This document shows, piece after piece, positions 85-51,715 of a DNA stretch of 64,000 nt. Source of the stretch: Isurus oxyrinchus (taxonomy: Eukaryota). The translations under genes were made by a program, and so were the position numbers. Location of the stretch: contig JANJGN010000008.1 of assembly GCA_026770705.1 (NCBI GenBank), positions 18,724,001 to 18,788,000 on the forward strand. The letters are read 5' to 3'. Positions within the stretch are counted from its first letter, which is position 1, and the number at the start of each line of letters is the position of its first letter. The notes beneath the pieces were generated by a model that saw nothing but the letters and a program-made list of their open reading frames with translations, had not been told where the DNA came from and ran no database searches.

Positions 85-2730
85 ACGTTCAGTGCTCAGC
101 AGCGGACTCAGTTTCATACTCTTATGCCTTCACCTGCTTAGGGTCACCAGGCACGATGCTGAGCTCTTCTTCCGCTGCCTTCATCTCCGTGCTCACTTCT
201 TTGGGCAGGAGTCCTCTCCCCGTTCAACAGACACTTTTACCTGCCTTCAATATTCTCCCTCCACCTAGACCCCTCCCCCTGGATTCTTACCTGCTCTCGA
301 TCTTTTCATTGAGAACTGTCAGCGTGACATCAGTCGTCTTAATTTCTCTGCTCCTCTCACCCACTCTAACCTGTCTCTTTCTGAACTTGCCGCACTCCGT
401 TCTCTCAGGTCCAACCCTGACTTTGTCATCAAACCTGCTGACAAGGGTGGTGCTGTTGTTGTCTGGCGTACTGACCTCTACCTCACAGAGGCTGAGTGTT
501 ACCTTGCATACACTTCCTCCTACCTCCCTCTGGACCATGACCCCACCAGTGAACACCAAGCCATTGTTTCCAGGACTGTCACTGACCTCATCTCCTCTGG
601 AGATCTTCCCTCCACAGCTTCCAAACTCATAGTCTCCCAACCTCGGACAGCCCGCTTCTACCTCCTACCCAAAATCCACAAACAGGACTGTCCCAGCAGA
701 CTGATCGTGTCAGCCTGTTCCTGCCCCACGGAACTCATTTCTTGCTATCTTGACTTCATTCTCTCTCTCCTTGTCCAGTCTCTTTCCACCTACATCCATG
801 ATTCCTCTCATGCCCTACATCATATCAACAATTTCCAGTGCCCTGGCCCCAGCCGCCTCCTCTTCACCATGGATGTCCAATCCTTCTTCACCTCCATCCC
901 CCACTGGCATGGTCAGAGGGCTCTCCACTTCTTCCTCAAGCAGAGGCCCGAACAATCCCCATCCACCAATACTCTCCTCCGTCTGGCTGAACTTGTTCTC
1001 TCACTGAACAATTTCTCCTTTAACTCCTCTCACTTCCTCCAAATAAAAGGTGTGGCTATGGGTAGCCGGTTGGGCACCAGTTATGCCTGTATCTTTATGG
1101 GGTATGTGGAACATTCCTTGTTACAGTCATACTCAGACCCCCTCCCACAACTCTTTCTCCAGTACGTTGATGACTGCTTTGGTGCCGCTTCATGCTCTCG
1201 TCTAGACCTGGAAAAATTTATTAATTTTGCTTCCAATTTCCACCCCTCCATCATTTTCACATGGTCCATCACTGACACTTCCCTTCCTTGACCTCTCTGT
1301 CTCAATTTCTGGTGATAGACTGTCCACTAATATTCATATGAAGCCTACCAACTCCCACAGCTACCTCGACTACAGCTCCTCACACCCCAATTCCTGTAAG
1401 GACTCCATCCCAATCTCTCAATTCCTTCGTCTCCATTACATCTGTTCTCATGATGCCACTTTCAAAAACTGCTCCTCTGTCATGTCTTCCTTCTTCCTTA
1501 ACCCAGGTTTTCTACTCATGGTGGTTGACAGGGCCCTCAACCGTGTCCGGCCCATCTCCTGTGCATCCGCCCTCACGCCTTCTTCTCCCTCCTAGAACCA
1601 TGATAGGATCACCCTTGTCCTCACTTATCACCCCACCAGCCTCCACATTCAAAGGGTCATCCTCCGCCTTTTCTGCCAACTCCAACATGCTGCCCCACCA
1701 AACACATCTTCCCTTCATCCCCCCTGCAGCTTTCTGCAGGGATCATTCCCTCCGGGACACCCTGGTATCACTCCTCCATCACCTCCTACAGCTCAACCCC
1801 CTCCCACGGCACCTTCCCATGCAACCGCAGAAGTTGCACTACCTGCCCCTTTACTTCCCCCCTCCTCACTGTCCAAGGGCCCAAACACTCCTTTCAAGTG
1901 AAGCAGTACTTCCCTCAATTTAGTCTACTGCGTTCGCTGCTCCCAATGCAGTCTCCCTTACATTGGAGAGACCAAACACAGACTGGGTGACCGCTTTGTA
2001 GAACACCTTCGGTCTGTCCGCAAGCATGACCCAGACCTCCCTGTTGCTTGCCATTTCAACACACCACTCTGTTCTCATGCCCACATGTCCATCCTTGGCC
2101 TGCTGCAATGTTCCAGTGAAGCTCAATGCAAACTGGAGGAACAGTAACTTCATCTTTTGTCTTGGCACTCAACAGTCTTCTGGCGTTAATATTGAGTTCA
2201 ACAACTTCAGACCATGAACTCTCACCTCCATCCCCACATCCATTCCGATCCCCCTTTTTCTAATAATTTAAAATATGTTTTTCTTTTCCCACCTATTTTT
2301 AAATTTATTTTAATCTATTGTTTTATCTCCACCTTTTAGCCCATTTCGAACTGTTCCCCCCACCCCACCTCCACTCAGGCCATCTGCCACTAGCTTATCC
2401 TGCTTTCTAACCTTAATGTCCCCATTAACACATTCCTTAGATAATATCACCACCGTCAACACCACTTTGTCCTTTTGTCTATGACATCTTTGGCAATCTC
2501 TTCTTTGCCTCTACCTATCACTGGCCCTCAATCCAGCTCTACCTGTCCCACCCCCCTCAACCAGCTAATATTTCACCTCATTTCTCTGTTTCCTTAGCTC
2601 TGATGAAGAGTCATACGGACTCGAAATGTCAACTGTTTCCCTTTCCGCAGATGCTGTCAGACCTGCTGATAGACCAGCTATTTTTGTTTTTGTTTCTGAT
2701 TTCCAGCATCCGCAGCATTTTGCTTTTATC
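85..2730 (+). mobile_element. Penelope-like retroelement (RT plus GIY-YIG endonuclease), decayed, with 3' terminal repeat
   Basis: ORFs 707-1291 and 1227-1595 contain FTMDVQSFFTSIPH, QIKGVAMGSRLG, QYVDD and PFLDLSVSI. Region ~1917-2020 reads NLVYCVRCSQCSLPYIGETKHRLGDRFVEH (GIY-YIG). Stops and frameshifts present. Confidence 0.92.
2600..2634 (+). ncRNA. Minimal type-I hammerhead ribozyme-like motif in the Penelope terminal repeat
   Basis: CTGATGA-A-GAGTC(ATACG)GACTC-GAAA-TGTC: conserved core boxes flanking a 5-bp stem II. Confidence 0.65.
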
Positions 2731-8117: not shown

Positions 8118-11100
8118 AAGTTCCCAGTTCCCATGTGTCTGCTGCCCTTGTCCTTCTAATTGGTAATGGTCATGGGTTTGGAAGGTACTGTCAAAGGAGC
8201 CTTGGTGAATTCCTGCATCTTGTAGATGGTACACACTGCTGCAACTATGCATCAGTGGTGCAGGGAGTAAATGTTTGTGGATGGGGTGCCAATCGAGCGG
8301 GCTGCTTTTTCCTGATTGGGTCAAGCTTCTTGAGTGTTGTGGGAGCTGCATTCATCCAGGCAAGTGGTGAGTTTTTCATCACACTCCTTAGGTTGTGCCT
8401 TGTAGATGGTGGACAGGCCTCTGGGGAGTTAGGAGGTGAGTTACTTGTCACAGGATTCCTAGCCCCCAGCCTACTCTTGTAGCCACAGTATTTATATAAC
8501 TAGTCCAGTTCAGTTTCTGGCCAATGGTAAGACCCAGGGTGTTGATCGTTTGGGTAAAGTCAATGAACATTAGGGGGCAAAGGTTGGATTCTCTCTTGTT
8601 GGAGATGGTCATTACCTGACACTTGTGTGGTGTGAATGTTACTTGCCATTTGTCAGCCCAAGCCTGGATATTGTCCAGGTCTTGTTGAATTTGGACATGG
8701 ACTGCTCCAGTATCTGAGGATTCATGAAAGGTGTTGAACATTGTGCAAATATCAGTGAACATCCCCACAGGTCACTATCCTGAGGAACATCTGCAGTGAT
8801 GCCCCGGAGCTGAGATGACTGACTTCCAACAGCCTCCAACAATGACAACCACCTTCCTTTGTGCCAGGTATGAATCCAGCCAGCGGCCAGTTTCCCCTCT
8901 GATTCCCATTGACTCCAATTTTGCTAGGGCTCCTTGATGCCACGTCAAATGCGGCTTTGATATCAAGGAAAGTCACTCTCACCTCATCTCAGGAGTTCAG
9001 CTCTTTTGTCCATGTTTGAACCAAAGCTGTAATGAGGTCAGGAGCTGAGTGGCCCTGGCGGAACCCAAACTGAGCGTCAATGAACTGGTTATTGCGAAGG
9101 AAGCCTTGGAGGAGTAAAGAAAGTGTAGCAGAGGTGGGAGATTCTTCGAAAAGTAATTAAGGGAATGAAGGTCTGGCATGAAAAAACACTGGTGGGCAAG
9201 ATGAAGGAAAATCCCAGAGCACTTTATAAATGTATTAAGAACAAGAAGTTAACTGGGGAAAGAGTCGGGCCCATTAGGGACCTAAGTGGCAATCTGTGTG
9301 TGGAGCCAGAGGAGGTGGTGAAGTTTTGAATTATTACTTTTCATCTGTGTTCACTATGGAGAAGGATGATGTTGGTGTAGAAATCAGGAAGGGGGACTGT
9401 GATATACTTAAATTAGCATTGAAAGGGAGGAGGTATTAACAATTTTAGCAGGCTTAAAAGTGGATAAATTCACAGGCCCAGATTAGATGTATCCCAGAGT
9501 CGTATGTAAGGCAAGGGAGTGGATTTCAGGGGCTCCGACACTAATTTTCAAATCCTCTCTGGCCACAGGAGAGGTGCCAGAGGACTGGAGGACAGTGAAT
9601 GTGCTACCATTACTCAAGAAGGGTAGTCAGGATAAACCAGGTAATTACAGGCCAGTGAGTCTAACAACAGTGGTAGGGAAATATGGAAAAAGTTCTGAGG
9701 GACTGGAGTAATTTCCACTCAGAGCGACAGGGATTAATCCGGGATAGTCAGCATGGCTTTGTCAGGGGGGAGTTCATTTCTAACAAATTTGATTGAATTT
9801 TTCGAGGAGGTGACTAGTTGTGTAGATGAGGGTAATGCAGCTATTGTATTCTACATGGACTTCAGTAAGGCTTTTGAAAAGGTCCCGCATGGGAGAATGG
9901 TCAAGAAGGTAGGAGCCTGTGGGATCCAGGGCAATTTGGCAAATTGGATCCAAAATTAGTTTAGTGGCAGGAGGCAGAGGGTGATGGTCAAAGGTTTATT
10001 TTTGTGATTGGAAGCCTGTTACGAGTGGTTTACTACAGGGATTAGTGCTGGGACCCTTGCTGTTTGTAGTTAATGTTAATGATTTAGATGTGAATAGAGA
10101 AAGCATGGTCAGTAAATTCGCAGATGAAGCGAAAATTGGTGGTGTGGTAAATAGGAAGGAGGAAAGCCTTAGATGACAGGACGATATGGATGGGCTGGTA
10201 AGATGGGCTGAGCAATGGCAAATGGAATTTAATCCTGAGAAATGTGAGGTGATGCATTTTGAGAGGACTAACATGGCAAGGGAATACACAATGAATGCTA
10301 GGATCCTGTGAAGCACAGAGGAGCAGAGGGACCTTGGTAGACATAATCCCTGAAGGTAACAGCACAGGTAGATAAGATGGTTAAGAAAGCATATGGGATA
10401 CTTGCCTTTATTAGCCGAGGCATAAAATATAAGAGCTGAAGTTATGTTGGAGCTGCATAAAATCCTAGTTAGGCCACAGCTGGAGTACTGTGTGCAGTTC
10501 AGATCACCACATTATAGAAAGTGTGTGATTGCACTGGAGAGTGTGCAGAGGAGATTCACCAGGATGTTGCCTGCGACAGAGAGTTTCAGCTATGAAGAGA
10601 GACAGGATAGGCTAGGGTTGTTACCCTTAGAGCAGAGAAGGCAGAGACAGGACCTGTTAGAGGTATACATAATTATGAGGAGTATAAATAAGGTAGATAG
10701 AAATAAATTTTTCCCCTTAGTGGAGGTGTCAATAATCAGGGAGCATATGTTTAAGGTAAGGGGCAGAAGGTTTAGAGGGGATCTTTTTCACCCAGAGGGT
10801 GGTTGGAATCTGGAACACACTGCAGAGGCAAGAACCCTCACAACATTTAAGAAGTATTTAGATGAACACTTGAAATGCCAGAGCAAACAGGATTACGGGC
10901 CAAGTGCTGGGAAATGGGATCAGAATAGATAGGTGCTTGATGGCTGGCACGGACACGATGGGCTGAAGGGCCTGTTTCTGAGCTGTATAACTCTATGTCT
11001 CCATGACTCAAGTGCCACTTGATAGCACTGTTGATGACCCCTTCCATTACTTTACTGATGAACAAGAGTAGACTGACGGGGTGGTAATTGGTTGGGTTCG

Positions 11101-11780
11101 ATTTGTCCTGCTTTTTGTGTACAGGACGTACTTGGACAATTTTCCACATAGCCAGGTAGATGCAAATGTTGTAGCTGCACTGGAACAGATTGGCTAGGGG
11201 TTTGGAAAATTCTGGAGCACATGTCTTCAGTACTATTGCCAGAATATTGCTCGTAGCATTTGCAGTATCCAGTGCCTTCAGCCGTTTCTTGATATCACGT
11301 GGAGTGAATCGATTTGGCTGAAGACTAGCATCTGTGATGCTGGGGACCTTCGGAGGAGGCCGAGGGGGATCATCCACTTAAGCTCTCCTTGCTAATGATT
11401 GTAGCAAATGCTTCAGCCTTATCTTTTGCACTGATGTGCTGGGCTCCCCCATCATTGAGAATGGGAATATTTGTGGAGCCTCCTCCTCCAGTGAGCTGTT
11501 CAATTGTCCGCCACCATTCACAACTGGATGTGGCAGGACTGCAGAGCTTATACCTGATCTGTTAGTTGTGGGATCGCTTAGCTCTGTTTATCACTTGCTG
11601 CTTATGCTGATTGGCATGCAAATCATCCTGCATTGTAGCTTCACCAGGTTGACGCCTCATTTTTAGGTATGCCTGTTGCTGCTCCTGACATGCCCTCCTG
11701 CATTCTTCATTGAACCAGGATTGATCCCCTGACTTTCTGGTAATGGTAGAGTGGGGAATATGCAGGGCCATGAGGTTACT
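8118..11780 (-). mobile_element. HER1/CR1 LINE ORF2 fragment split by a nested CR1 (pieces ~8118-9099 and ~11008-11780)
   Basis: RT motifs LDIKAAFD, MFTDIC and NYHPVSLL..ISKVMEGVIN. The sequence resumes across the insertion, as shown by the uninterrupted copy at ~30745-30785. Confidence 0.85.
9100..11008 (+). mobile_element. CR1 LINE, 5'-truncated
   Basis: GNYRPVSLT, YMDFSKAFEKVPH and LVRPQLEYCVQF motifs; CTCTATG-type 3' tail. Confidence 0.92.
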
Positions 11781-12252: not shown

Positions 12253-12918
12253 GAAATGCAAATTATGTTTACTTTTTGCATGAGGGAGATGATATTTCAT
12301 TAAAAGGATCAGACAATCCTGGATAAAAATAAAAAAAACTGCGGATGCTAGAAATCCAAAACAAAAACAGAAACAGAAATACCTGGAAAAACTCAGCAGG
12401 TCTGGCATCATCGGCGAAGAAGACCACAGTTGACGTTTCGAGTCCTCATGACCCTTCAACAGAACTAAGTAAAAATCGGTGACTAAGTAAAAATTGTCAC
12501 CCCTCCCCTTTAAAGCAACTTATATTTCACCCCTTTCCTATTTTTACTTAGTTCTGTTGAGGGGTCATGAGGACTCGAAACGTCAACTTTGCTCTTCTCC
12601 GCCGATGCTGCCAGACCTGCTGAGTTTTTCCAGGTATTTCTGTTTCAGACAATCCTGGAGATGGTCCTGTTGCCTGGAAATGGATACCACACTCAGGGCT
12701 AGAAATCCAACCGCTGGTTACTTTATACAAAACGTGACTGGGCTGGAGGCTTGCAGAATGCAGTGAATTCTTAGAGACAGCAATTTGTTTAATAAATTTA
12801 ATAGATTGGTACCAATCTGAAAATTAGAAATCCCACATTTAAACTGGCAGGATTCATTCATCTTGATTCAAACCCAGCCTCAAAATCCTCAAATGGTATG
12901 AAATATTTGGGATCAAAG
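12253..12918 (+). pseudogene. Ig domain 1 exon (V-like, lacking the canonical B-strand Cys), disrupted
   Basis: Acceptor TTTCTAACAG|. With the insertion removed it reads GNANYVYFLHEGDDISLKGSDNPGDGPVAWKWIPHSGLEIQPLVTLYKT*, then NLKIRNPTFKLAG in another frame, then KWYEIFGIK+G|GTGAGT. AWKWIPH parallels D3 AWSWKPRH. Confidence 0.75.
12324..12644. mobile_element. Inverted Penelope-terminus insertion in the D1 exon with a 15-bp TSD
   Basis: TCAGACAATCCTGGA at 12309-12323 and 12645-12659; internal inverted copies of the 2590-2730 repeat family. Confidence 0.9.
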
Positions 12919-13169
12919 GTGAGTGGAAACAACGTCCAGCAATAAAATAGTTCTCTGTAAAAAATTTAATTGTAATCAGGAGACTGTGAGGAGTAAGTGA
13001 AGATTATATCTCCTAGTGCAGAGTATATCTCTTATTAAAACAATCAGAGGTAAGAGGGTGTGTTGGAAACATGTTTCCATAGAATAAGTCCTTAAAAATG
13101 TACCAGTTTTAACCTGTTCACAATGTGCATGCTATATTTCAATTAGATCACCCTAAACACACACAGGAA

Positions 13170-15817: not shown

Positions 15818-16041
15818 NNNNNNNNNNNNNNNNNNNNNNNNNNNNNNNNNNNNNNNNNNNNNNNNNNNNNNNNNNNNNNNNNNNNNNNNNNNNNNNNNNN
15901 NNNNNNNNNNNNNNNNNNNNNNNNNNNNNNNNNNNNNNNNNNNNNNNNNNNNNNNNNNNNNNNNNNNNNNNNNNNNNNNNNNNNNNNNNNNNNNNNNNNN
16001 NNNNNNNNNNNNNNNNNNNNNNNNNNNNNNNNNNNNNNNNN
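15818..16041. other. Assembly gap
   Basis: Run of N. Confidence 1.
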
Positions 16042-16464: not shown

Positions 16465-16734
16465 TTGAGACAAGTCCACAGTGGTCTGTGGTGGGCAATG
16501 ATGTTACTCTCAGCTGCACAATCTCCAAACTCTCAGATACAGTCAGTCTTCACTGGAAACAGAGAGACTCATCTCAGCAGAACAAGAGGAAAACTGATCA
16601 GGTCCAACTAAATGACACAGTCTATCTGATAGTCAAACATGTTGCAGTAGAGGATGGGAAATTTTATGAGTGTGAAGTGAAGGAAAATGGATTCATCATT
16701 CTCACAGGAAAGGCACGTTTTTCAGTGGATAAAA
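16465..16734 (+). pseudogene. Ig domain 2 exon (C2-type), open frame
   Basis: TTTTTCACAG| VETSPQWSVVGNDVTLSCTISKLSDTVSLHWKQ...YLIVKHVAVEDGKFYECEVKENG...FSVDK+A|GTAAGC; phase 1/1; C-W-DxGxYxC pattern. Confidence 0.92.
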
Positions 16735-19967: not shown

Positions 19968-20317
19968 AGTTATATGGTGAGAGTTACATTCTTTATCGAT
20001 CAGGCACAGCTCACAGTGAACTCTATCTGATTTGCTATGCTTATTACAATAGGATTTTTCACATTTACTCCATTGCTGCATGGAGCTGGAAGCCACGTCA
20101 TCCTCCAAATCAGGAGAAAGAAATAGCATCTGCATCGAAACATCAGCCCATCAATGTAAACAGGACTGACTTTGGGAATCGTCTTGTCCCCAGACAAGTT
20201 TTAATGGTGTGAATTTCAGCGTGAGGATTGTCCCCGTGCTGTTTGAAGATGCTGGAGTTTACACATGTTCTCTGGATAGAAAAACATGGGTGACCATTAC
20301 ACTAATCACAGTTAAAG
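19968..20317 (+). pseudogene. Ig domain 3 exon (V-type), one frameshift
   Basis: ATTACAG| KLYGESYILYRSGTAHSELYLICYAYYNRIFHIYSIAAWSWKPRH...TDFGNRLVP, frameshift at ~20190, then SFNGVNFSVRIVPVLFEDAGVYTCSLDRKTWVTITLITVK+G|GTAGG. Confidence 0.9.
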
Positions 20318-20395
20318 GTAGGAGACAGAATGTTGCTGCTGTTTTCAATGATCAAGTCAATGTTTAAAATCTAAATGATTTTCTTGTTTACACTG

Positions 20396-20660
20396 TGACA
20401 ACTGAACCATCTGATGCAGTGACTGAGGGAGACAACCTTACCCTGAACTGCTCCGTCTCTGATGTCACTGAAACAATGAGACTTGTTTGGATCAATAGTG
20501 ATGGCAAAACTGTTGTAGAGAAAACATTGAAGGAAGAGAAACAGGAACAGGGTTATTCTGATTATTCAGAATGCCGACCGAGACAGAAGGAACTGGACAT
20601 GTGTTTTGTTTCATCAAAACACACCCAAAGTTTTAATTCCATATTATCTGAAGGTTAACA
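20396..20660 (+). pseudogene. Ig domain 4 exon (C2-type, WxC motif), broken acceptor and a frameshift
   Basis: Acceptor reads TG at 20394-95. VTTEPSDAVTEGDNLTLNCSVSDVTETMRLVWINSDGKTVVEKTL, frameshift at ~20551, then VILIIQNADRDRRNWTCVLFHQNTPKVLIPYYLKVN+A|GTAAGA. Confidence 0.9.
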
Positions 20661-28400: not shown

Positions 28401-29201
28401 CTACACTTGGTCAGACACAAATAAACCCTTCTAGGCAACACTCCCTTCAAAATGTTTAACTATAAAAAATCCAGTATTATTACTCAAGGCAAACTGCCGT
28501 AGGCTCAATAGAGGCATACCGTGTTACCTTGCAACTCTCTCCCACTCTACTGTAGAATCCAAACTTCAGAATAAACTGCCTGCTGCATTCCAAGACTTTC
28601 CTGGCTTGACTCGATGGCTGGTTGAAATGACACTCCTCCTAATCCAAAGCTAACGGCTTCCAACTCAGCTCCAACTGCTATCAACAACTCAAACAGCTAC
28701 ATCTTCAGCTGCAGCTCAACAGCTATCCCAAGCATTCCACAGTAACTCTAAAATACCTTTTTTCCTCGGTTTATCTCAGGTTGCATTGTGTTCACACCTC
28801 TTTAAAACTCAAATCCTTCTAAATATAAGTTCTTCCATATTTCCATCTTGTCTTTAATTTTGGGTCAGCAAAGTATAATATCCCTGCCCCTTTCTATTTA
28901 CTCGTGGAACTCCTGCAAGATGTAAACTTGTTTCTTTCTCACCTCTGACTCCTCTTTGATATTCAAACAAGCTCTCAACTTATCTAAAATTGCAAATGGT
29001 AGGTCTAACGCAACACCTCTATCCTGTCCATGTCTTAAATCCCCCAGACAACCGGTCTCANNNNNNNNNNNNNNNNNNNNNNNNNNNNNNNNNNNNNNNN
29101 NNNNNNNNNNNNNNNNNNNNNNNNNNNNNNNNNNNNNNNNNNNNNNNNNNNNNNNNNNNNNNNNNNNNNNNNNNNNNNNNNNNNNNNNNNNNNNNNACAC
29201 A
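22440..29201 (-). mobile_element. Gmr1-like Gypsy element (SCAN-like gag; PRO-INT-RT-RH order)
   Basis: LTRs ~28140-29200 and ~22440-23159. PBS TGGGGGCTCATCTGGGAT (28118-28135, tRNA-Pro-like); PPT at 23160. ELVPEAYQWKFR, FRDTGTS; INT 25096-26182 lies upstream of RT (YIDD, 23866-24189). Confidence 0.88.
29061..29196. other. Assembly gap
   Basis: Run of N inside an LTR. Confidence 1.
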
Positions 29202-35844: not shown

Positions 35845-36498
35845 TGGGAGTCTGCCTGTGCAGGAAATTGTCAATTTACATCATGCAGTGTGATAATATT
35901 TTAGTATTTTAGATTTTGAAATAAAATAATAAATTAAATGTGCAATAGTTAAGTGTTATTTTTAAAATGGATCCTTCAAAAGCATGTATGGTAGCAAAGT
36001 TGGATATGAATAATTTCATTAAAATGGCACTTATCAAAATAGGTGTTTTTTTTGAAATAATGACTTGTTTCAGACCTGTGGCTGTTTTGCACCTTGATAG
36101 TTAATGTCTTCCAGGGCAGCACAGCCAAGATTGGGAATTTGCTGCCCAAGGAATCTCAGGTGTGAATCTGTACTCTACCAGTCTGGTCAAGACAAAACTT
36201 TTACATCGGTTTATTCTAACGTAGATAATGAAAATCTCCCTTTTCATTCACTCAGAGCTGCTCACTTTAGTTCAAAACCATTCCACCCACAACAATCTGT
36301 GAAAATATGTGCAGATATATAAACTGTGACTTAAAAAGAAACACTAGGATAATTTTTCACAAAGATCCGGTGCTCTGGCTCTAATGTTTAAAGCAGAATA
36401 TTTTCACTTTCCGCATCTTTCATAGAATAAAAGGCTGGAATTTTTAAATTTTAATTGCAATGGAGAGACAGACCAAATAATAACTTTGTCATTCACAG

Positions 36499-36608
36499 TG
36501 AGAGCGAGAACCCTTCCAGACATTTGGATCATCACAGTTTCCGGTTACTTGTTGGTTAAACTGAGCTTTGCAGTTGGACTAATTTGCTGCTTGAAGAAGA
36601 TGAACAGC
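36499..36608 (+). pseudogene. Transmembrane exon of the Ig receptor
   Basis: ATTCACAG| (M)RARTLPDIWIITVSGYLLVKLSFAVGLICCLKKMNS |GTAAGA; phase-1 start matches D4; hydrophobic span with an internal K, then CC and KK stop-transfer. Confidence 0.85.
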
Positions 36609-37761
36609 GTAAGAATTATTTAAAGTTTTCCAATAAGTCAGGAATTAGTGTTGAACTGTCACTTGACATTGAGAAAAGTGATGCCATTGAACAGATATTA
36701 TGTGGTCACAAACTGAATTTTAAAATACTATTTAAATGTTGTACATTTCCAGGATATAAAAGAATCATCAAGTGGTACAGATAAACAGAACAATTGCTCC
36801 AAATTGTGTGAAATCTTAGAGCATTGGCATTTTTCCTGATTTAAATGCCAGAAAGTTCCTTGTTCCCACTTTCCACAAGACTCAAGGAAGAAATTGGGAA
36901 CAACCTAGATCACCATCCCTGTTTATCAATGAATGGACAATGCTCAAACTCGGAGTCAATCTTTTAATATTATTCATTGACTATCACCAATGTTCCTCTT
37001 TGGAAGTTATTATTTTGGAAACTGTTAGGAAGCAATACTTTAACAGTTAAAGCATGAGCTGTAAAAATGACGATGAACTGAAAATACTACTATATTTTGT
37101 GACAATTTGAGTATATTTTTTGTGTGTGCTGTTATTCTTGTTATTGTGGGCTGGTGTCACTAGAGAGCTTCAGTAGGGTTGGGTTTCAGAATCAGTTTGT
37201 CACTTTGCAAACCACTTCCTCTGTGCCAGGTTTGGCTTACCTATTTCCTCATGGTGAAATCTCAATCAATTCAAAATGAAAGATTCTATTTTGGAGAGCC
37301 CTGACCAGTTTGTGTTCAAGGGAGGAATGTTTCAAGGCTGTTTGCTTTTCAGTGAAGCGAGATTTGTAGAAAAGGAACCAGTTGGGTAAAAGATTCAACA
37401 ATGTTGTAACCACTGGGAAGATTGAATTTACATCAAAGGTGTGAGGTAACCTGTATTGTTTAAGATGTTTACATAGAATTATATGGTAGCTACAGCACAG
37501 AAGCAGGCCATTCAGCCCAGCTGGCCTACGTTGGGAATCATGCACCATATGAGCTCTTCCCACTCTTCTGACACATCCTTCTTTTCATGTCTCTTTCCTG
37601 TAAACTCTCGCTTCCCCTGAAATGAATCATCAATGTAATGCTTGCCTCAGCTACACCAGCTGTTTATGAGTTCCAGCAAGGAAAGGATCAGGGAAATCCC
37701 TGATGCTCAGAACTGATTATAAATGAATGAAATAAAAACAGAAAATGAACATTGCTCACAT

Positions 37762-38130
37762 TACAGAATCACAGAATCACACAGTGCAGAAGAGGCCCTT
37801 CGGCCCATCGAGTCGGCACTGACATGTGAGAAACACTTGACCTACCTATCTTATCCCATTTACCAGAACTTGGCCCATAGCCTTGAATGTTATGACATGC
37901 CAAGTGCTCATCCAGGTACTTTTTAAAGGATGTGAGGCAACCCGCCTCCACCACCCTCCCAGGCAGCGCATTCCAGACAATCACCACCCTCTGGGTAAAA
38001 ATGTTTTTCTGCACATCCCCCCTAAACCTCCTGCCCCTCATCTTGAACTTGTGGCCCTCATGACAGACCCTTCAAATAAGGGGGGCAGCTGCTCCCCACT
38101 ATCCACCCTGTCCATGCCCCTCATAATCTT
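37762..38130 (-). mobile_element. CR1 LINE 3' end
   Basis: FTQRVVIVWNALPGRVVEA...FKKYLDEHL; (TGATTCTG)n tail. Confidence 0.9.
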
Positions 38131-38650
38131 AGAAGTCTAAAAATAGGAACCTATTATTCTAGTGTTAATATTTTCAAATAGTTTACAATCACATCTATTC
38201 CTCTTGGAAATTAGTAACGTCAAATTGCCAGAAATTAATCAATTTGAACAGTTGTTGGTTAAAATGTGACAAATAAAAATGACAACAGGTTGAACAGTGA
38301 TACTGAATATTGTGAAAATGAATGATTCCGTTAAACTTCACAGCAAATCACAGATCAGGGAGGTAAAGAAAGAGATTTGACCAGCAGCTCTGGGTGGAGA
38401 ACATTGTTCAGTCAGAGGCAGAGTCGTAAGTTCAAGGAGGTTACTATATAGGTGAGGTTGGTCAGCCACAAGGAGATCCTGTTGAGATATGGTCACATTG
38501 TGGCCAAGAGCTTTGGCCTCTGTGGTGTGAATCTACTTCACATTCAGATTTTCACAGCTGTAAAAACCTTCCACAAAACATTCTATCAGTAACTGGAACG
38601 AGTTTATAATTCCAGGTTTGTTCCTTCCAATTTCTTCCATTGAAGCCTTT

Positions 38651-39360
38651 GAGTGGAATTTTGCAATAGCCTGCCATTCCCAATGTTGGGGTGAAATCCA
38701 GGTCAGGAATTTGGATGTGGTTGTGGTGGGGCTTCGGATGCAATTTTCCTAGAGGCGGCCAATTTACAAGCTGCCTGCAGGTGCCTTGTCCAATTAGGAA
38801 CAGCAGCCAGGTTCCTGTGTTCCAATCAGTGTGGGCTGTGGATAGGGAATTCAGCCATTCTGATAATGTGGGCAGTGCCAGGGCAAGAAGAGGAGTGGCA
38901 GTAGCACCCTCCAATGGGATAAAAGAGTCATTGCAGCAAGGTAAGGATTATTGGAGACATCGGTCCCTATTCAGTGAATGTGAGGGTATGCCCTTGCTAT
39001 CCTGGGTCAGCCCCACTTTGTGAATTACTGCTGACAAATAATCTGAAACCCTCAACTGAGTCACAGGTCGGGTCTCCAGCTGCGATGCCAACTCCGATCC
39101 ATTGTCAGACCCCTGAACCAGTGAGAGGCCCATCCATTCCAGGGACAATCTCTTTCCCCATGCAGTTAACTGGTTCATGGCCACACTTCATTGGCACCAT
39201 ACTGCTGCCTGGCAGGTTACCATCAAACCTATTAGCCCACCTCCTGGAAAAACTCATGGAGGCAGGAATGCATTGAGGAGCCAACCCAATCTAGACCTTT
39301 CCTAATTTCCTCCCCACCATGTTCCAAAGCTGCATCTGTAGGTCTGGGAAAACTCAGCCC
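38651..39360. mobile_element. Non-autonomous Harbinger-like element
   Basis: Degenerate TIRs GAGTGGAATTTTGC / GGAAAACTCAGCCC. Confidence 0.5.
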
Positions 39361-39531
39361 TTTACCTGTTGCAGTGATCCCATTAACAATGATTCGGTTT
39401 TGTGTGGGTCAAGTTCTGTTCAGTTGCCCATTCTGTAAAAATGTCTTTATTTGATTTGCACTTCATCCATCACTTAAGCCCAATGTTTGTTCCTGAAGGA
39501 TTTATTTAAATACATTTTTGCCTTTTGTTAG

Positions 39532-39633
39532 ATATCAAACAATAGGAATCCACCCAAGGCGACTGGAAATAAAGAAACTGTCCAATTACAGACCCTGAAC
39601 TCTGACACTGATTTGAGATCATGGAATGAATGA
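39532..39633 (+). pseudogene. Probable cytoplasmic-tail exon
   Basis: Strong acceptor TTTTTGCCTTTTGTTAG|; phase-0 frame ISNNRNPPKATGNKETVQLQTLNSDTDLRSWNE*; the last codons overlap a CR1-tail-like fragment. Confidence 0.5.
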
Positions 39634-41059
39634 CATAGCACAGAAGGAGACCATTCAGCCCATCATGTCTGTGACCAGTGATCAATCCAAGCTCGGAAAC
39701 TGAAGAGTTGGTTTAGTTTTGGATATCTCCTGTGGTGATATTTTTATATAGCTAGATTTGTTTACATTGCAAATTGTCATTTCGTTGGTTCCCAATCTCA
39801 TTATCTCTTAGTTTACTTCACAACCACTAACTTTCCAGGTTATTGTATGAAATTGCAATGGGTGGAAATTCATTTGGAAATTGTTCTGAATTCCTGATCT
39901 CCATTCCTGTCTGGTGAGGCTCCACACTGTCAACATGATTTTATGATCGGAGGAATTGATGTTAACCCAGTCATGAAGCTGAGTGAAATGCTTGAAGAAT
40001 TGCAACATGGAATTGTGACTGTGGGTCCCCAGTGTATGATCAGCTGGACTCTCTCTGCACAGGAGCTGAATGGAGCTGATTTGCTGCAAATGAGAAGGAA
40101 TGAACCTCGGTTCAGTAAATATGGGTGTCTCTCATTCATCTCCCAACACCTGAGCACACAATGAGGCAGCAGAACCTCAGGAGTAGGTTGTGTCCATGCT
40201 CTCAAACAAGGGATTGTTTATAACCAACCATAGCTAAAAGATTGACAACAAAATAATCATGATAATATGACCATGAATAAATGATGTGGAAAAGCAAATG
40301 AACACTTTCAAGTTGGAGTGAATAATGTTTTGGGGAAAATGTATTTGTTTATCATCAACAATCATTTAAAAACTCCAATAATCAACTGATTATATTCATA
40401 GATTGTGGTGATGAGATTGGTTCAGAATGGAATGGGAAAGTATTTCCTATAGTCATTGAATGACTCCTGCCCAATCACAGGCCTTCCCCTTTGATCTTTC
40501 CCTATCAGGGAATGTTTGATCTGTTTGTAAAGAGAGCTCCCAACTTTCTTTGCAATGACTTAAAATTGTAAACTTTGAAAGGAAATTAGCAAAATCATTA
40601 ACCTGGATTTTCAATTCTTTTAGCTCATAATTTTTGAATTTTGTCATTGAAAATTTGTGACTGTTCATTTATGATATATATAAAGGTTTGTGTGTATCTA
40701 TTGAGTGTAAATTCAAATAGAGACTGAAAAATCATTAGCAAGTTTGTAAACCTATTAATAAAAGAACCCTTTAAGGATGATATATTTGGACAATTTTTGA
40801 AGCTTAATTGATTACTATATGTCATGGTTGACACATTGAACTTTAATTTCTGAAGCTAATAAATGATAAAGGACAAACTGTACACAGTAAGAGAACAATA
40901 ATAATGTTTTTAAGAATCTTTAACGATGAATTTAACTTCCGTAGTAAAAAACTTTCAAAGGAATGATTGTACTGAACAAAGGAATGATTCCAATGGTGTA
41001 GATAAGTTTAATGTTGCTTAAATATAATATAAAATTAATACACTCACTTCTTATTGAGG

Positions 41060-49533: not shown

Positions 49534-51715
49534 TCATAGAGTCATAGAGGTCTACAGATGACCCTGAGGCCCAACGAGTCTGCACCAGTCAAAAAAGTAC
49601 GTAACCATTCTAATCCCATTTTCCAGTCCTAGACCCATAGCCTTTTATGCCATTTCATCGTAAGCACATATCCAAATACTCCTTAAATGTGCTGAGGGTA
49701 TCTGCCTCTACCACCCTTTCAGGCAGAGAGTTCCCTATCTATGCCACTGATAATTTTATAAACCTCAATCATGTCCCCTCTCAATCTCCTCTGCACCAGG
49801 GAAAATAACCCCAGGCTATCCAATCTCTCCTCATAACTAAAATCCTCCAGCCCAGGCAACATCCTGGTAAATCTCCTCTGCACTCTCTCTGGTGCAAGCA
49901 CACGTTTCCCAAAATGCGGATTAGAGAACTGCGTGCAATACTCCAGCTGTGGCCTAACCAGCGTTTTATACAGTTCCAGCATAATCTCTCTGCTCTTATA
50001 TTCTATGCCTTGGCTAATAAGAGCAAGTATCCCATATGCCACCTTAATCGCCTTAGCTACCTCACCCGCTACCTTCGGGGATTGGTGGAAAACAAGGTCC
50101 CTCTGATTCTCGGTACTTCCCAGGGTCCTACCATTCACCGTGTATTCCCGTGCCTTGTTTGTCCTACCCAAGTGCATTACCTGTCACTTATCTGGATTAA
50201 ATTCCATTTGCCACTGATCAGCCCATATGGCCAGTCCGTCTATATCCTCCTGTAATCTAAGGCTATCCTCCTCACTATTTACCCCCCTCCAATTTTTGTA
50301 TCATCCATGAAATAACTGACCAACCCTCCCACATTCAAGTCTAAATCATTTATATATACCACACACAGCAGGGGACCCAACACTAATCCCGGTGAACCCA
50401 ACTGGACACAGGCATCCAGTCACAAAAACACCCCTCGACCATAACCGTCTGCTTCCTGCCACTCAGCCAATTCTGGATCCAATTTGCCAAATTGCCTTCG
50501 ATCCCATGGGCTTTTACCTTTGTTATCAGTCTCCCATGCGGGACCTTATCAAAAACCTTTTTGAAGTCTAAGTAGACTATATCAAATGCATTGCCCTCAT
50601 CTACACCTCCTCTTCGAAAAATTCAATCAAATTGATCAGACATGACCTCCACTTAACAAAACCACGCTGACTGTCTTTGATTAATCCCTGCCTCTCCATG
50701 TGTAGATTAATTCTGTCCCTCAGAATTGCTTCCAATAGATTCCCCACCACTGAGGTTAGACTGACTGGCCTGTAGTTCCCTGGTTTATCCCTTTTTCCCT
50801 TCTTGAATAATGGTACCACACTGGCTGTCCTCCAGTTCTGTGGCACCTCTCCTGTGGCCACAGAGGTATTGAATATTATTGCCAGCGCCCCTGCTATCTC
50901 CTCCCTTGCCTCACTCAACAGCCTGGGATACATTTCATCCAGGCTTGGAGATTTATCTACTTTTAAACCTGCCTGACCACTTGGAACCTCTTCCCTTTCT
51001 ATGCTAATTTCTTTAGCTATATCACAATCCTAATGCTTGATTTGCATACCCATGTTGTCCCTCTCACTTGTGAACACTGACACAACGTATTCATTCCGAA
51101 CCCTACCTACATCTTCAGGCTCCACACACAGATTACTACTATGGTCCTTAATAAGCCCTACTCTTACCCTAGTTATCCTCTTACTCTTAATGTACTTGTA
51201 AAATAACTTTGGATTTTCCTTTATGTTACCTGCCTGTGTTCCTTCATGTCCCCTTTTTGCTCTCCTAATTTCCTTTTCACATTATATACACATTATATAC
51301 ACCTTGAGGGCTTCCACTGTTTTCAGCCCTCGGTATCTACCATAAGGCTCCCTTTTTCTCTTTATCCAATCCTGCATATCCTTCAACATTCAGAGTTCCC
51401 TGGATTTGCTGGTCCCACCCTTTGTCTTTACTGAAATGTGTTGGCCCTGTTTCCTTCTTGAATGAGTCCCTCTGCTCCGATGCAGATTTACCTAAAAGTA
51501 GCTGCTCCCAGTCCAATCTGGCCAAATCATATCTGATCTTATTAAAATTGGCCTTCTCCCAGTTTAGAACTCTGATTTCTTGTCCATCCTTACCCTTTTT
51601 CATAACAACATTGAATCTAATGTAGTTATGATCACTATCTGCAAAATGCTCCCCCACTGATACCTCCACCACTTACCCAGCTTCATTTCCTAAAATTAAG
51701 CCCAGGACCTCTCTA
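49534..51715 (-). mobile_element. CR1 LINE, 5'-truncated
   Basis: ORFs 49719-50177, 50601-50933 and 51337-51672 (endonuclease C-terminus GEHFADSDHN through RT); (CTCTATGA)n tail at 49534. Confidence 0.92.

What the first reader, a model, noticed from the sequence alone, without database searches (positions are those of the whole stretch)
36499..36608. Lysine in the middle of the TM helix: probable adaptor-coupled activating member
Seen: IWIITVSGYLLVKLSFAVGLICCLKK with intact splice sites and juxtamembrane CC. Established: a central TM Lys with a motif-less tail is how TREM, NKp44 and activating KIR pair with DAP12. CD4 and LAG-3 lack it. Inference: the family may form paired activating/inhibitory receptors.
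Basis: partly seen in the sequence, partly recalled or inferred. Interest (0 to 1): 0.75.

Follow-up and report, generated by a model that had tools for sequence, protein, structure and literature searches.

The report
Shark activating-type receptor membrane exon
This exon is the membrane anchor of the "accelerator" version of an unnamed shark and ray immune-receptor family, and its buried lysine is kept in every relative found. The gene copy in this window, however, looks broken in its outer part.

Summary
Window 36501-36608 (+) reads RARTLPDIWIITVSGYLLVKLSFAVGLICCLKKMNS, with AG at 36497-98 and GT at 36609-10. Contigs from two likely-RNA runs use this donor exactly, joining 36608 to 39532 and 36608 to 36753.

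The lysine is not pseudogene drift. In 136 family proteins, all 29 whose membrane segment matches the window core at 9 or more of the 22 other positions carry K there. These come from 14 shark and ray species. None of the 30 K-type proteins has an ITIM-like or ITAM motif. By contrast, 53 of 60 members with an uncharged membrane segment have ITIM-like tails. K-type and ITIM-type partners within a species share 87-97% identical ectodomains, so the family is built as paired activating and inhibitory receptors.

Two corrections:
- **Tail:** it is not motif-less. A 33-residue tail exon (39532-39633) carries LQTLNSDTDL, a motif conserved from sharks to skates.
- **Local gene:** it looks decayed. D1 has four stops, D3 and D4 have frameshifts, and the D4 acceptor is lost.

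Adaptor coupling (DAP12-like or FcR-gamma) is inferred, not tested. The scan had already noted this family on neighbouring DNA (s1-869870, s1-866804, s1-869576, s1-866854).

The parts
12255..12323 (+). Remnant of the start of Ig domain 1 (NANYVYFLHEGDDISLKGSDNPG)
   Evidence: tblastn of P0005 and others, 70% identity over 23 aa
12648..12944 (+). Domain 1 (V-like) exon remnant with four in-frame stop codons
   Evidence: tblastn alignments to P0005, P0190, P0154 and P0220, 35-44% identity, stops shown in the subject line
16465..16734 (+). Domain 2 (C2-like) exon, open, AG/GT flanked, phase 1/1
   Evidence: Pfam Ig_3 E 8.7e-8. 71% identity to P0005, 75% to P0220
19968..20317 (+). Domain 3 (V-like) exon with a frame change between 20191 and 20200. 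The donor GT at 20318-19 is followed by an open read-through, GRRQNVAAVFNDQVNV*
   Evidence: frame +2 up to 20191, frame +1 from 20200
20396..20660 (+). Domain 4 (C2-like) exon. TG stands where the acceptor AG should be (20394-95). The frame changes between 20550 and 20558. The NWTC (WxC) motif lies in the second frame. The donor A|GTAAGA at 20660/61 is intact
36499..36608 (+). Transmembrane exon with the central Lys (codon AAA at 36558-36560): the finding itself
36753..36839 (+). Alternative 3' exon joined to 36608 in one contig of run X1. It reads DIKESSSGTDKQNNCSKLCEILEHWHFS*. Contigs continue to at least 37033
   Evidence: joint 36608->36753, GT..AG, records 1 and 2; translation
39532..39633 (+). 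Cytoplasmic tail exon, ISNNRNPPKATGNKETVQLQTLNSDTDLRSWNE*, acceptor AG at 39530-31, phase 0. The 3' UTR runs beyond 39700
   Evidence: Joint 36608->39532 in one contig of run X2

Best explanation
The exon is the membrane anchor of a K-type (activating-type) member of an unnamed multigene family of Ig receptors found across sharks and rays. The family's ectodomain is built from V-C2-V-C2 units, and its closest solved relative is LAG-3. The family comes in two forms. One has an uncharged membrane segment and a long tail with ITIM-like tyrosine motifs. The other has the conserved helix W-x6-Y-L-x-V-K-L-x4-G-L and a short tyrosine-free tail. Shown here: the Lys and its helix are kept from sharks to skates, they never occur with ITIM tails, and the two forms share near-identical ectodomains within species. 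Inferred: the buried Lys docks an Asp-bearing signalling dimer. A DAP12-like adaptor is most likely given a central Lys; FcR-gamma is the alternative. That dimer would supply the activating signal and would probably be needed for surface expression. The copy in this window has a decayed ectodomain, so it probably makes no full receptor, yet its 3' exons are still transcribed and spliced.
For: Exon and splice sites. Donor use in RNA-like contigs, joining 36608 to 39532 and 36608 to 36753, both GT..AG, and absent from the DNA-like run X3. Exon map onto homologues, with D4 donor A plus TG giving Met as in P0190 (LKVNM-RAR...). Lys conservation with the K position masked: 29 of 29 proteins at 9 or more of 22 identities, and 27 of 27 at 10 or more; 110 non-family control proteins reach at most 9. 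These cover 14 species, 6 sharks and 8 batoids. Y(-4), L(-3), K(0), L(+1) and G(+6) are invariant in 25 distinct cores; the first four are partly fixed by my selection pattern. Motif split: 0 of 30 K-type proteins have ITIM-like or ITAM motifs, while 53 of 60 with an uncharged membrane segment have at least one ITIM-like motif. Same-species pairs: P0005/P0188 97.0% over 435 aa, P0209/P0199 91.0% (adjacent LOC numbers), P0225/P0221 93.6%, P0224/P0223 93.8%, P0145/P0142 86.8%. General rule that activating receptors lack ITIMs and carry a transmembrane Arg or Lys that binds DAP10, DAP12 or FcR-gamma: passage read in PMC4701786.
Against: No adaptor was examined. I could not obtain a shark DAP12 sequence by any allowed route, and no paper found reports one. 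The conserved tail motif LQTLNSD(T/P)DL suggests the tail may do something itself. The helical periodicity of conservation is only suggestive: 314 of 5000 shuffles reach it. The RNA contigs carry only 27-30 letters of this exon, and the runs are labelled RNA by guess. They also hold intronic pieces (X1 39255-39441, X2 38133-38283). Nothing from X1 or X2 was laid on 36499-36578. The local gene has four stops in D1, two frame changes and a lost acceptor, so this copy may make no protein. Isoforms and close paralogues inflate the protein counts.
Confidence: 0.7

Rival explanations
1. The Lys is drift in a dead gene: the working relatives have a hydrophobic residue there.
For: The local ectodomain exons are broken.
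Against: All 29 of 29 homologous membrane segments carry Lys when that position is masked in the comparison. They come from 14 species spanning the shark-ray split. The exon itself is open with intact splice sites that are used in RNA-like contigs.
Confidence: 0.02
2. The K-type form is real but does not signal through an ITAM adaptor. It could act as a decoy or ligand sink. It could signal or traffic through its own conserved tail motif LQTLNSD(T/P)DL. Or the Lys could pair it with another membrane protein.
For: The tail motif is kept in Pristiophorus, Heptranchias, Scyliorhinus, Leucoraja, Amblyraja and the window. That is more conservation than a mere spacer needs. No adaptor has been shown.
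Against: Many K-type members lack this tail altogether, with tails of 7-13 residues in P0029, P0027, P0156, P0185, P0209 and P0224, yet keep the Lys helix. The constant element is therefore the helix, not the tail. A buried Lys without a partner is normally a retention or degradation signal (established knowledge, recalled).
Confidence: 0.2
3. The local gene is intact and the apparent lesions are assembly errors, so this window encodes a working activating receptor.
For: The D3 frame change lies at a run of T and the D4 one at a run of G. D2, TM and tail exons are open, and the 3' end is transcribed.
Against: D1 has four in-frame stops and only 35-44% identity in its middle. The D4 acceptor is a substitution (TG for AG), not a length error. 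Carcharodon P0229 has three more residues at the D4 frame-change site, which points to a real deletion.
Confidence: 0.12
4. The exon belongs to a T-cell-receptor-like constant region, whose membrane helices also carry a Lys.
For: Only a recalled resemblance of a Y-L-L-x-K helix followed by CC to TCR gamma.
Against: The exon maps to the end of V-C2-V-C2 receptor proteins in 30 homologues. There was no PDB sequence hit at E up to 10, and no V/J/C organisation nearby.
Confidence: 0.01

Closest known systems
DAP12-coupled activating Ig receptors (activating KIR, TREM1/2, NKp44, SIRP-beta)
   Same: A single Lys near the middle of the membrane helix, a short tail without ITIM or ITAM, and inhibitory counterparts with near-identical ectodomains encoded nearby. 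The principle was read in a PMC4701786 passage. The named examples are recalled.
   Different: Unrelated ectodomain (four or eight Ig domains in V-C2 units). A conserved tyrosine-free tail motif is present in part of the family. No adaptor association has been shown. It works like them by inference only.
LAG-3 and CD4
   Same: V-C2-V-C2 domain order. WxC motif in the D4-type domain (NWTC here). LAG-3 is the best solved-structure match to the family profile (E 1.2e-11), and CD4 follows at 3.3e-7. The WxC hallmark comes from passages of PMC10768021.
   Different: The D2-type domain has YxC, not WxC (FYEC). There is no CD4 Cx(C/H) motif and no LAG-3 (F/Y)xxL(D/E) motif in the tail. It is a multigene family with 8-Ig members, a transmembrane Lys or true ITIM tails. 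Single-sequence similarity to CD4/LAG-3 is no better than to NCAM2 or JAML.
Paired Ig-receptor multigene families of fishes and birds (teleost NITR, LITR, NILT; chicken CHIR)
   Same: Clustered, fast-diversifying genes with ITIM-type and charged-transmembrane-type members (abstracts of PMC2442602, PMC3022915 and PMC10764270 seen in the listing).
   Different: Different Ig domain types and numbers, and no detected sequence relationship. This family is so far seen only in cartilaginous fish.
CEACAM1-related receptors
   Same: CEA is the fourth-best PDB sequence for the family profile, after three LAG-3 sequences (E 3.4e-9). The two-tyrosine tail of the ITIM-type members recalls the CEACAM1 ITIM/ITSM layout (recalled). 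CEACAMs are said to exist in cartilaginous fishes (passages of PMC5112662 and PMC13278318).
   Different: CEACAMs have one N-terminal V domain followed by C domains, not repeated V-C2 units. Their activating members carry their own ITAM rather than a transmembrane Lys (passages of PMC13278318). Membership was not resolved here.

Membership tests
Adaptor-coupled activating Ig receptors (DAP12 / FcR-gamma type) | One basic residue inside the membrane helix | tested here: met
   Lys at residue 13 of 23. It is kept in 29 of 29 homologous segments.
Adaptor-coupled activating Ig receptors (DAP12 / FcR-gamma type) | Short cytoplasmic tail without ITIM or ITAM | tested here: met
   After the Cys-Cys the cytoplasmic part is 38 residues (5 from the TM exon, 33 from the tail exon) with no Tyr. 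0 of 30 K-type proteins have ITIM-like or ITAM motifs.
Adaptor-coupled activating Ig receptors (DAP12 / FcR-gamma type) | Inhibitory counterpart with a closely similar ectodomain | tested here: met
   Same-species pairs are 87-97% identical. This was shown in other species, not in this window.
Adaptor-coupled activating Ig receptors (DAP12 / FcR-gamma type) | Physical association with an Asp-bearing ITAM or YxxM adaptor, and dependence on it | not testable with these tools
   This needs co-expression and co-precipitation. No adaptor sequence was available to me.
Adaptor-coupled activating Ig receptors (DAP12 / FcR-gamma type) | A matching adaptor gene in the same genome | not tested
   Only unchecked scan notes report an FcR-gamma gene (s1-863553, s1-869613). 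There is no note of DAP12.
CD4/LAG-3 family | V-C2-V-C2 ectodomain | tested here: met
   The exon map D1-D4 matches four-domain homologues. Pfam scored the two exon pieces that were scanned (D3 second half, D4 first half) below the curated cut-offs for every Ig family, so domain types rest on homologue mapping.
CD4/LAG-3 family | WxC motif in strand F of both D2 and D4 | tested here: not met
   D4 has NWTC, but D2 has FYEC in the window and Y/L-Y-x-C in homologues.
CD4/LAG-3 family | Tail motif Cx(C/H) (CD4) or (F/Y)xxL(D/E) (LAG-3) | tested here: not met
   Neither motif occurs in the window tail or the alternative tail.
CD4/LAG-3 family | Location in the conserved LAG3-CD4 genomic region | not tested
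CEACAM family | A single N-terminal IgV (N) domain followed by IgC A/B domains | tested here: inconclusive
   The domain order here is repeated V-C2. The profile hit to CEA is E 3.4e-9, with no stretch passing on its own.

The most novel reading that the evidence does not exclude
A sister family of CD4/LAG-3, present before sharks and rays split, already worked as a classical paired-receptor system. One arm uses ITIM tails. The other uses a transmembrane-Lys helix plus a conserved tyrosine-free tail motif, LQTLNSD(T/P)DL, that is a so far unknown signalling or sorting element. This would place adaptor-type assembly at the base of jawed vertebrates and suggest that the CD4 (on) / LAG-3 (off) duality descends from such a pair.
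Probability: 0.15. Interest if true: 0.75.

Novelty: new member of a known kind. Interest (0 to 1): 0.5.

Why it matters
Paired activating and inhibitory receptors are a standard design, so the architecture itself is no surprise. What is useful is that a large shark and ray receptor family has a clearly separate activating arm. That arm's Lys helix has been held constant since sharks and rays diverged. The family appears in the databases only as 'uncharacterized', 'obscurin-like' or 'CD276 homolog', and its nearest solved relative is LAG-3. This gives comparative immunologists a concrete candidate for testing which signalling adaptors existed in the earliest jawed vertebrates. It also provides a conserved tail motif with no known role. 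For this window specifically, the result is modest: the copy is probably a transcribed pseudogene.

Tried and rejected
- **Second copy of the exon, or ITIM-type exons, in the window:** none. tblastn gave only chance-level hits. In one search the 8-Ig and ITIM-type queries P0149, P0154 and P0231 gave nothing beyond 20671 at E 0.05.
- **Family identification of single exons against PDB and Pfam:** only generic Ig matches. The TM exon gave no PDB hit at E up to 10.
- **TCR-like reading:** rejected, see rivals.
- **Word-indexed search with the TM-tail region of P0005:** only 4 proteins among 45 candidates, all of this family, so it gave no evidence that the cassette is shared with other families. 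Its reach is short.
- **Helical periodicity of conservation:** weak, 314 of 5000 shuffles reach it. It is not used as evidence.
- **Papers:** searches found no paper describing this family or a cartilaginous-fish DAP12. I read passages only of PMC10768021, PMC4016189, PMC5112662, PMC13278318 and PMC4701786. Other papers were seen only as listings. Supplementary files were not opened. Those of PMC10768021 could list further CD4/LAG-3-like shark genes.
- **Rows left out:** of the 137 hits I fetched 26 and later added P0097. The other 110, mostly giant Ig-repeat proteins or low-identity hits, were never examined. The family set of 136 is those 27 plus all 109 ids P0138-P0246. Six of the 126 hits were not listed and not seen.
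- **Joined protein model:** the spliced model was searched exon by exon.
- **N runs at 15818-16041 and 29061-29196:** left untouched.

Full report
**The exon.** Window 36501-36608 on the + strand translates without a stop to RARTLPDIWIITVSGYLLVKLSFAVGLICCLKKMNS. The sequence shows AG at 36497-98 and GT (gtaaga) at 36609-10. The exon is therefore 36499-36608, 110 nt, entering in phase 1 and leaving in phase 0. Phase 1 entry is usual for Ig-superfamily genes. The hydrophobic run is 23 residues with Lys at position 13. Neither flank could cross a membrane alone, so the Lys is intramembrane.

**The gene around it.** Mapping homologous proteins onto the window gives one gene on the + strand.
- D1 remnants lie at 12255-12323 and 12648-12944.
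- D2 is 16465-16734, D3 is 19968-20317 and D4 is 20396-20660.
- The TM exon is 36499-36608 and the tail exon is 39532-39633.

The D4 donor (A|GTAAGA at 20660/61) supplies the A that, with the TG opening the TM exon, makes Met. This matches LKVNM-RAR in the catshark protein P0190.

The tail exon has AG at 39530-31, is in phase 0 and reads ISNNRNPPKATGNKETVQLQTLNSDTDLRSWNE*.

The ectodomain is damaged in four ways:
- D1 has four in-frame stops and low identity in its middle.
- D3 changes frame between 20191 and 20200.
- D4 has TG where its acceptor AG should be.
- D4 changes frame again between 20550 and 20558, so its NWTC motif sits in another frame.

Two of these lesions lie at short homopolymers and could be assembly errors. 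The stops and the substitution could not. I take the copy to be a pseudogene, with about 12% left for an intact gene.

**RNA.** Of the 14 runs offered, I laid four on 36300-39700.
- One contig of X2 (408 letters, one other letter in 169 over 39532-39700) joins 36608 directly to 39532, skipping 2923 letters with GT..AG ends.
- One contig of X1 (151 letters) joins 36608 to 36753, skipping 144 letters, also GT..AG. This gives an alternative end, DIKESSSGTDKQNNCSKLCEILEHWHFS*.
- Neither joint is in X3 (DNA-like) or X12.

The predicted donor is therefore used, with two 3' ends. There are limits:
- The runs are RNA only by guess, and X1 and X2 come from one sample.
- Each contig carries only 27-30 letters of the TM exon.
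- Nothing from X1 or X2 was laid on 36499-36578.
- Both runs also hold intronic pieces.
- A near-identical paralogue cannot be excluded as the source.

**The family.** A full HMMER pass with the D2 exon found 137 proteins at E up to 0.001, 12 of them at E up to 1e-30. A profile of 16 members found 126 at E up to 1e-10, of which 120 were listed. All those named come from sharks, rays and one chimaera. They are labelled 'uncharacterized', 'obscurin-like', 'CD276 antigen homolog' or 'VCAM1-like'.

I classified 136 of them:
- 30 have the Lys helix, and none of these has an ITIM-like or ITAM motif.
- 60 have an uncharged membrane segment, and 53 of these have at least one ITIM-like motif.
- 10 have an Arg in the membrane segment.
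- 36 show no membrane segment; they are partial models or possibly secreted forms.

**Is the Lys conserved?** My first tally picked proteins with a pattern that contains K, so it is circular for that position. I repeated it with the K position masked. The best identity to the window's 23-residue core was scored over the other 22 positions.
- All 29 proteins with 9 or more identities have Lys there.
- All 27 with 10 or more identities have Lys there.
- At 8 identities, noise enters: three uncharged segments with I or L, plus one more K-type.

The 30 K-type proteins come from 14 species, 6 sharks and 8 batoids. Tyr(-4), Leu(-3), Lys, Leu(+1) and Gly(+6) are invariant in 25 distinct cores. The juxtamembrane Cys-Cys is kept in only 10-12 of the 25. 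None of the lamniform (white shark and basking shark) proteins retrieved is K-type.

**Pairing.** Within species, K-type proteins have ITIM-type partners with very similar ectodomains.
- P0005/P0188 (Pristiophorus): 97.0% over residues 1-435, diverging exactly where the TM exon begins.
- P0209/P0199 (Mobula hypostoma, LOC134348860 and LOC134348859): 91.0%.
- P0225/P0221 (Hypanus): 93.6%.
- P0224/P0223 (Hemitrygon): 93.8%.
- P0145/P0142 (Heptranchias): 86.8%.

Some pairs may be isoforms of one gene. Others have different LOC numbers.

**The tail.** The window's tail matches those of Scyliorhinus, Pristiophorus and Heptranchias and of the skates Leucoraja and Amblyraja in one short motif, LQTLNSD(T/P)DL. 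Around the motif the tails differ. Other K-type members end 7-13 residues after the membrane or carry an Arg-rich tail. The tail thus has no tyrosine motif, but it is not motif-less.

**Mechanism.**
- Shown: a conserved intramembrane Lys helix, mutually exclusive with ITIM tails, on receptors whose ectodomains match those of ITIM-bearing partners.
- Established elsewhere: activating receptors lack ITIMs, carry a transmembrane Arg or Lys, and bind DAP10, DAP12 or FcR-gamma (PMC4701786, passage).
- Inferred: this Lys docks an Asp-bearing adaptor dimer. A central Lys points to a DAP12-like partner. This positional rule is recalled, not tested.

Unchecked scan notes report an FcR-gamma gene in this genome and none for DAP12.

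**Relation to known families.** Against solved structures, the family profile hits LAG-3 best (E 1.2e-11), then CEA (3.4e-9), then CD4 (3.3e-7). A single member gives only generic Ig-level scores. The WxC hallmark of CD4/LAG-3 (PMC10768021, passages) is present in the D4-type domain but not in the D2-type domain. The CD4 and LAG-3 tail motifs are absent. I therefore describe it as LAG-3/CD4-like in build, not as a member of that family.

**Novelty.** My paper searches found no description of this family. Supplements were not seen. The scan itself had already noted the family, with 'on' and 'off' versions, on DNA just before and 125-190 kb beyond this window (s1-869870, s1-866804, s1-869576). 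It also noted another 110-letter Lys exon 152 kb downstream (s1-866854). The design is the familiar paired-receptor one, and this copy is probably dead. Interest is therefore moderate.

Noticed in passing
window 39532-39633, and proteins P0005, P0036, P0143-P0145, P0189, P0190, P0234, P0244: A tyrosine-free tail motif, LQTLNSD(T/P)DL, is kept between sharks and skates while the rest of the tail varies. Its function is unknown.
   Followed up: partly
window 36753-37033: An alternative 3' exon is spliced to the same donor (36608) in one contig of run X1. It gives a different 28-residue tail. Four of its five differences from the window are also in DNA-like run X3.
   Followed up: partly
window 20318-20367: Reading through the D3 donor gives GRRQNVAAVFNDQVNV*. 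Almost the same peptide ends the annotated basking-shark proteins P0194 and P0220 and, more loosely, the skate protein P0015. This hints at a conserved intron-retaining, possibly secreted three-domain isoform.
   Followed up: no
proteins P0010, P0150, P0168, P0171, P0172 (stingray and manta): A second charged-membrane type has an Arg in the outer third of the helix (IILVITRSLVLL) and a short tail without ITIM-like motifs. P0002, P0140 and P0183 combine a transmembrane Arg with ITIM-like tails.
   Followed up: no
protein P0156 (Pristis, 875 aa): An eight-Ig member carries the Lys helix, so the activating form is not confined to four-domain members.
   Followed up: no
window 37668-38237 and 39606-39700: High-copy repeat. 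Summed contig depth reaches about 787,000 in run X3, and many contigs join it to other places.
   Followed up: no
window 269-2144, 8451-11377, 49722-51672: Long open frames with reverse-transcriptase-like sequence (retroelement remnants) surround the receptor gene. 43.6-46.6 kb and 56.4-59.5 kb look like two copies of one element, as other notes on this window say.
   Followed up: no
protein P0167 (nurse shark, UniProt V9NJF3, 'obscurin-like protein'): This is the only member that seems to stem from a directed deposit rather than automatic annotation. It has an uncharged membrane segment and a 38-residue tail without ITIM-like motifs. No paper was found for it.
   Followed up: partly
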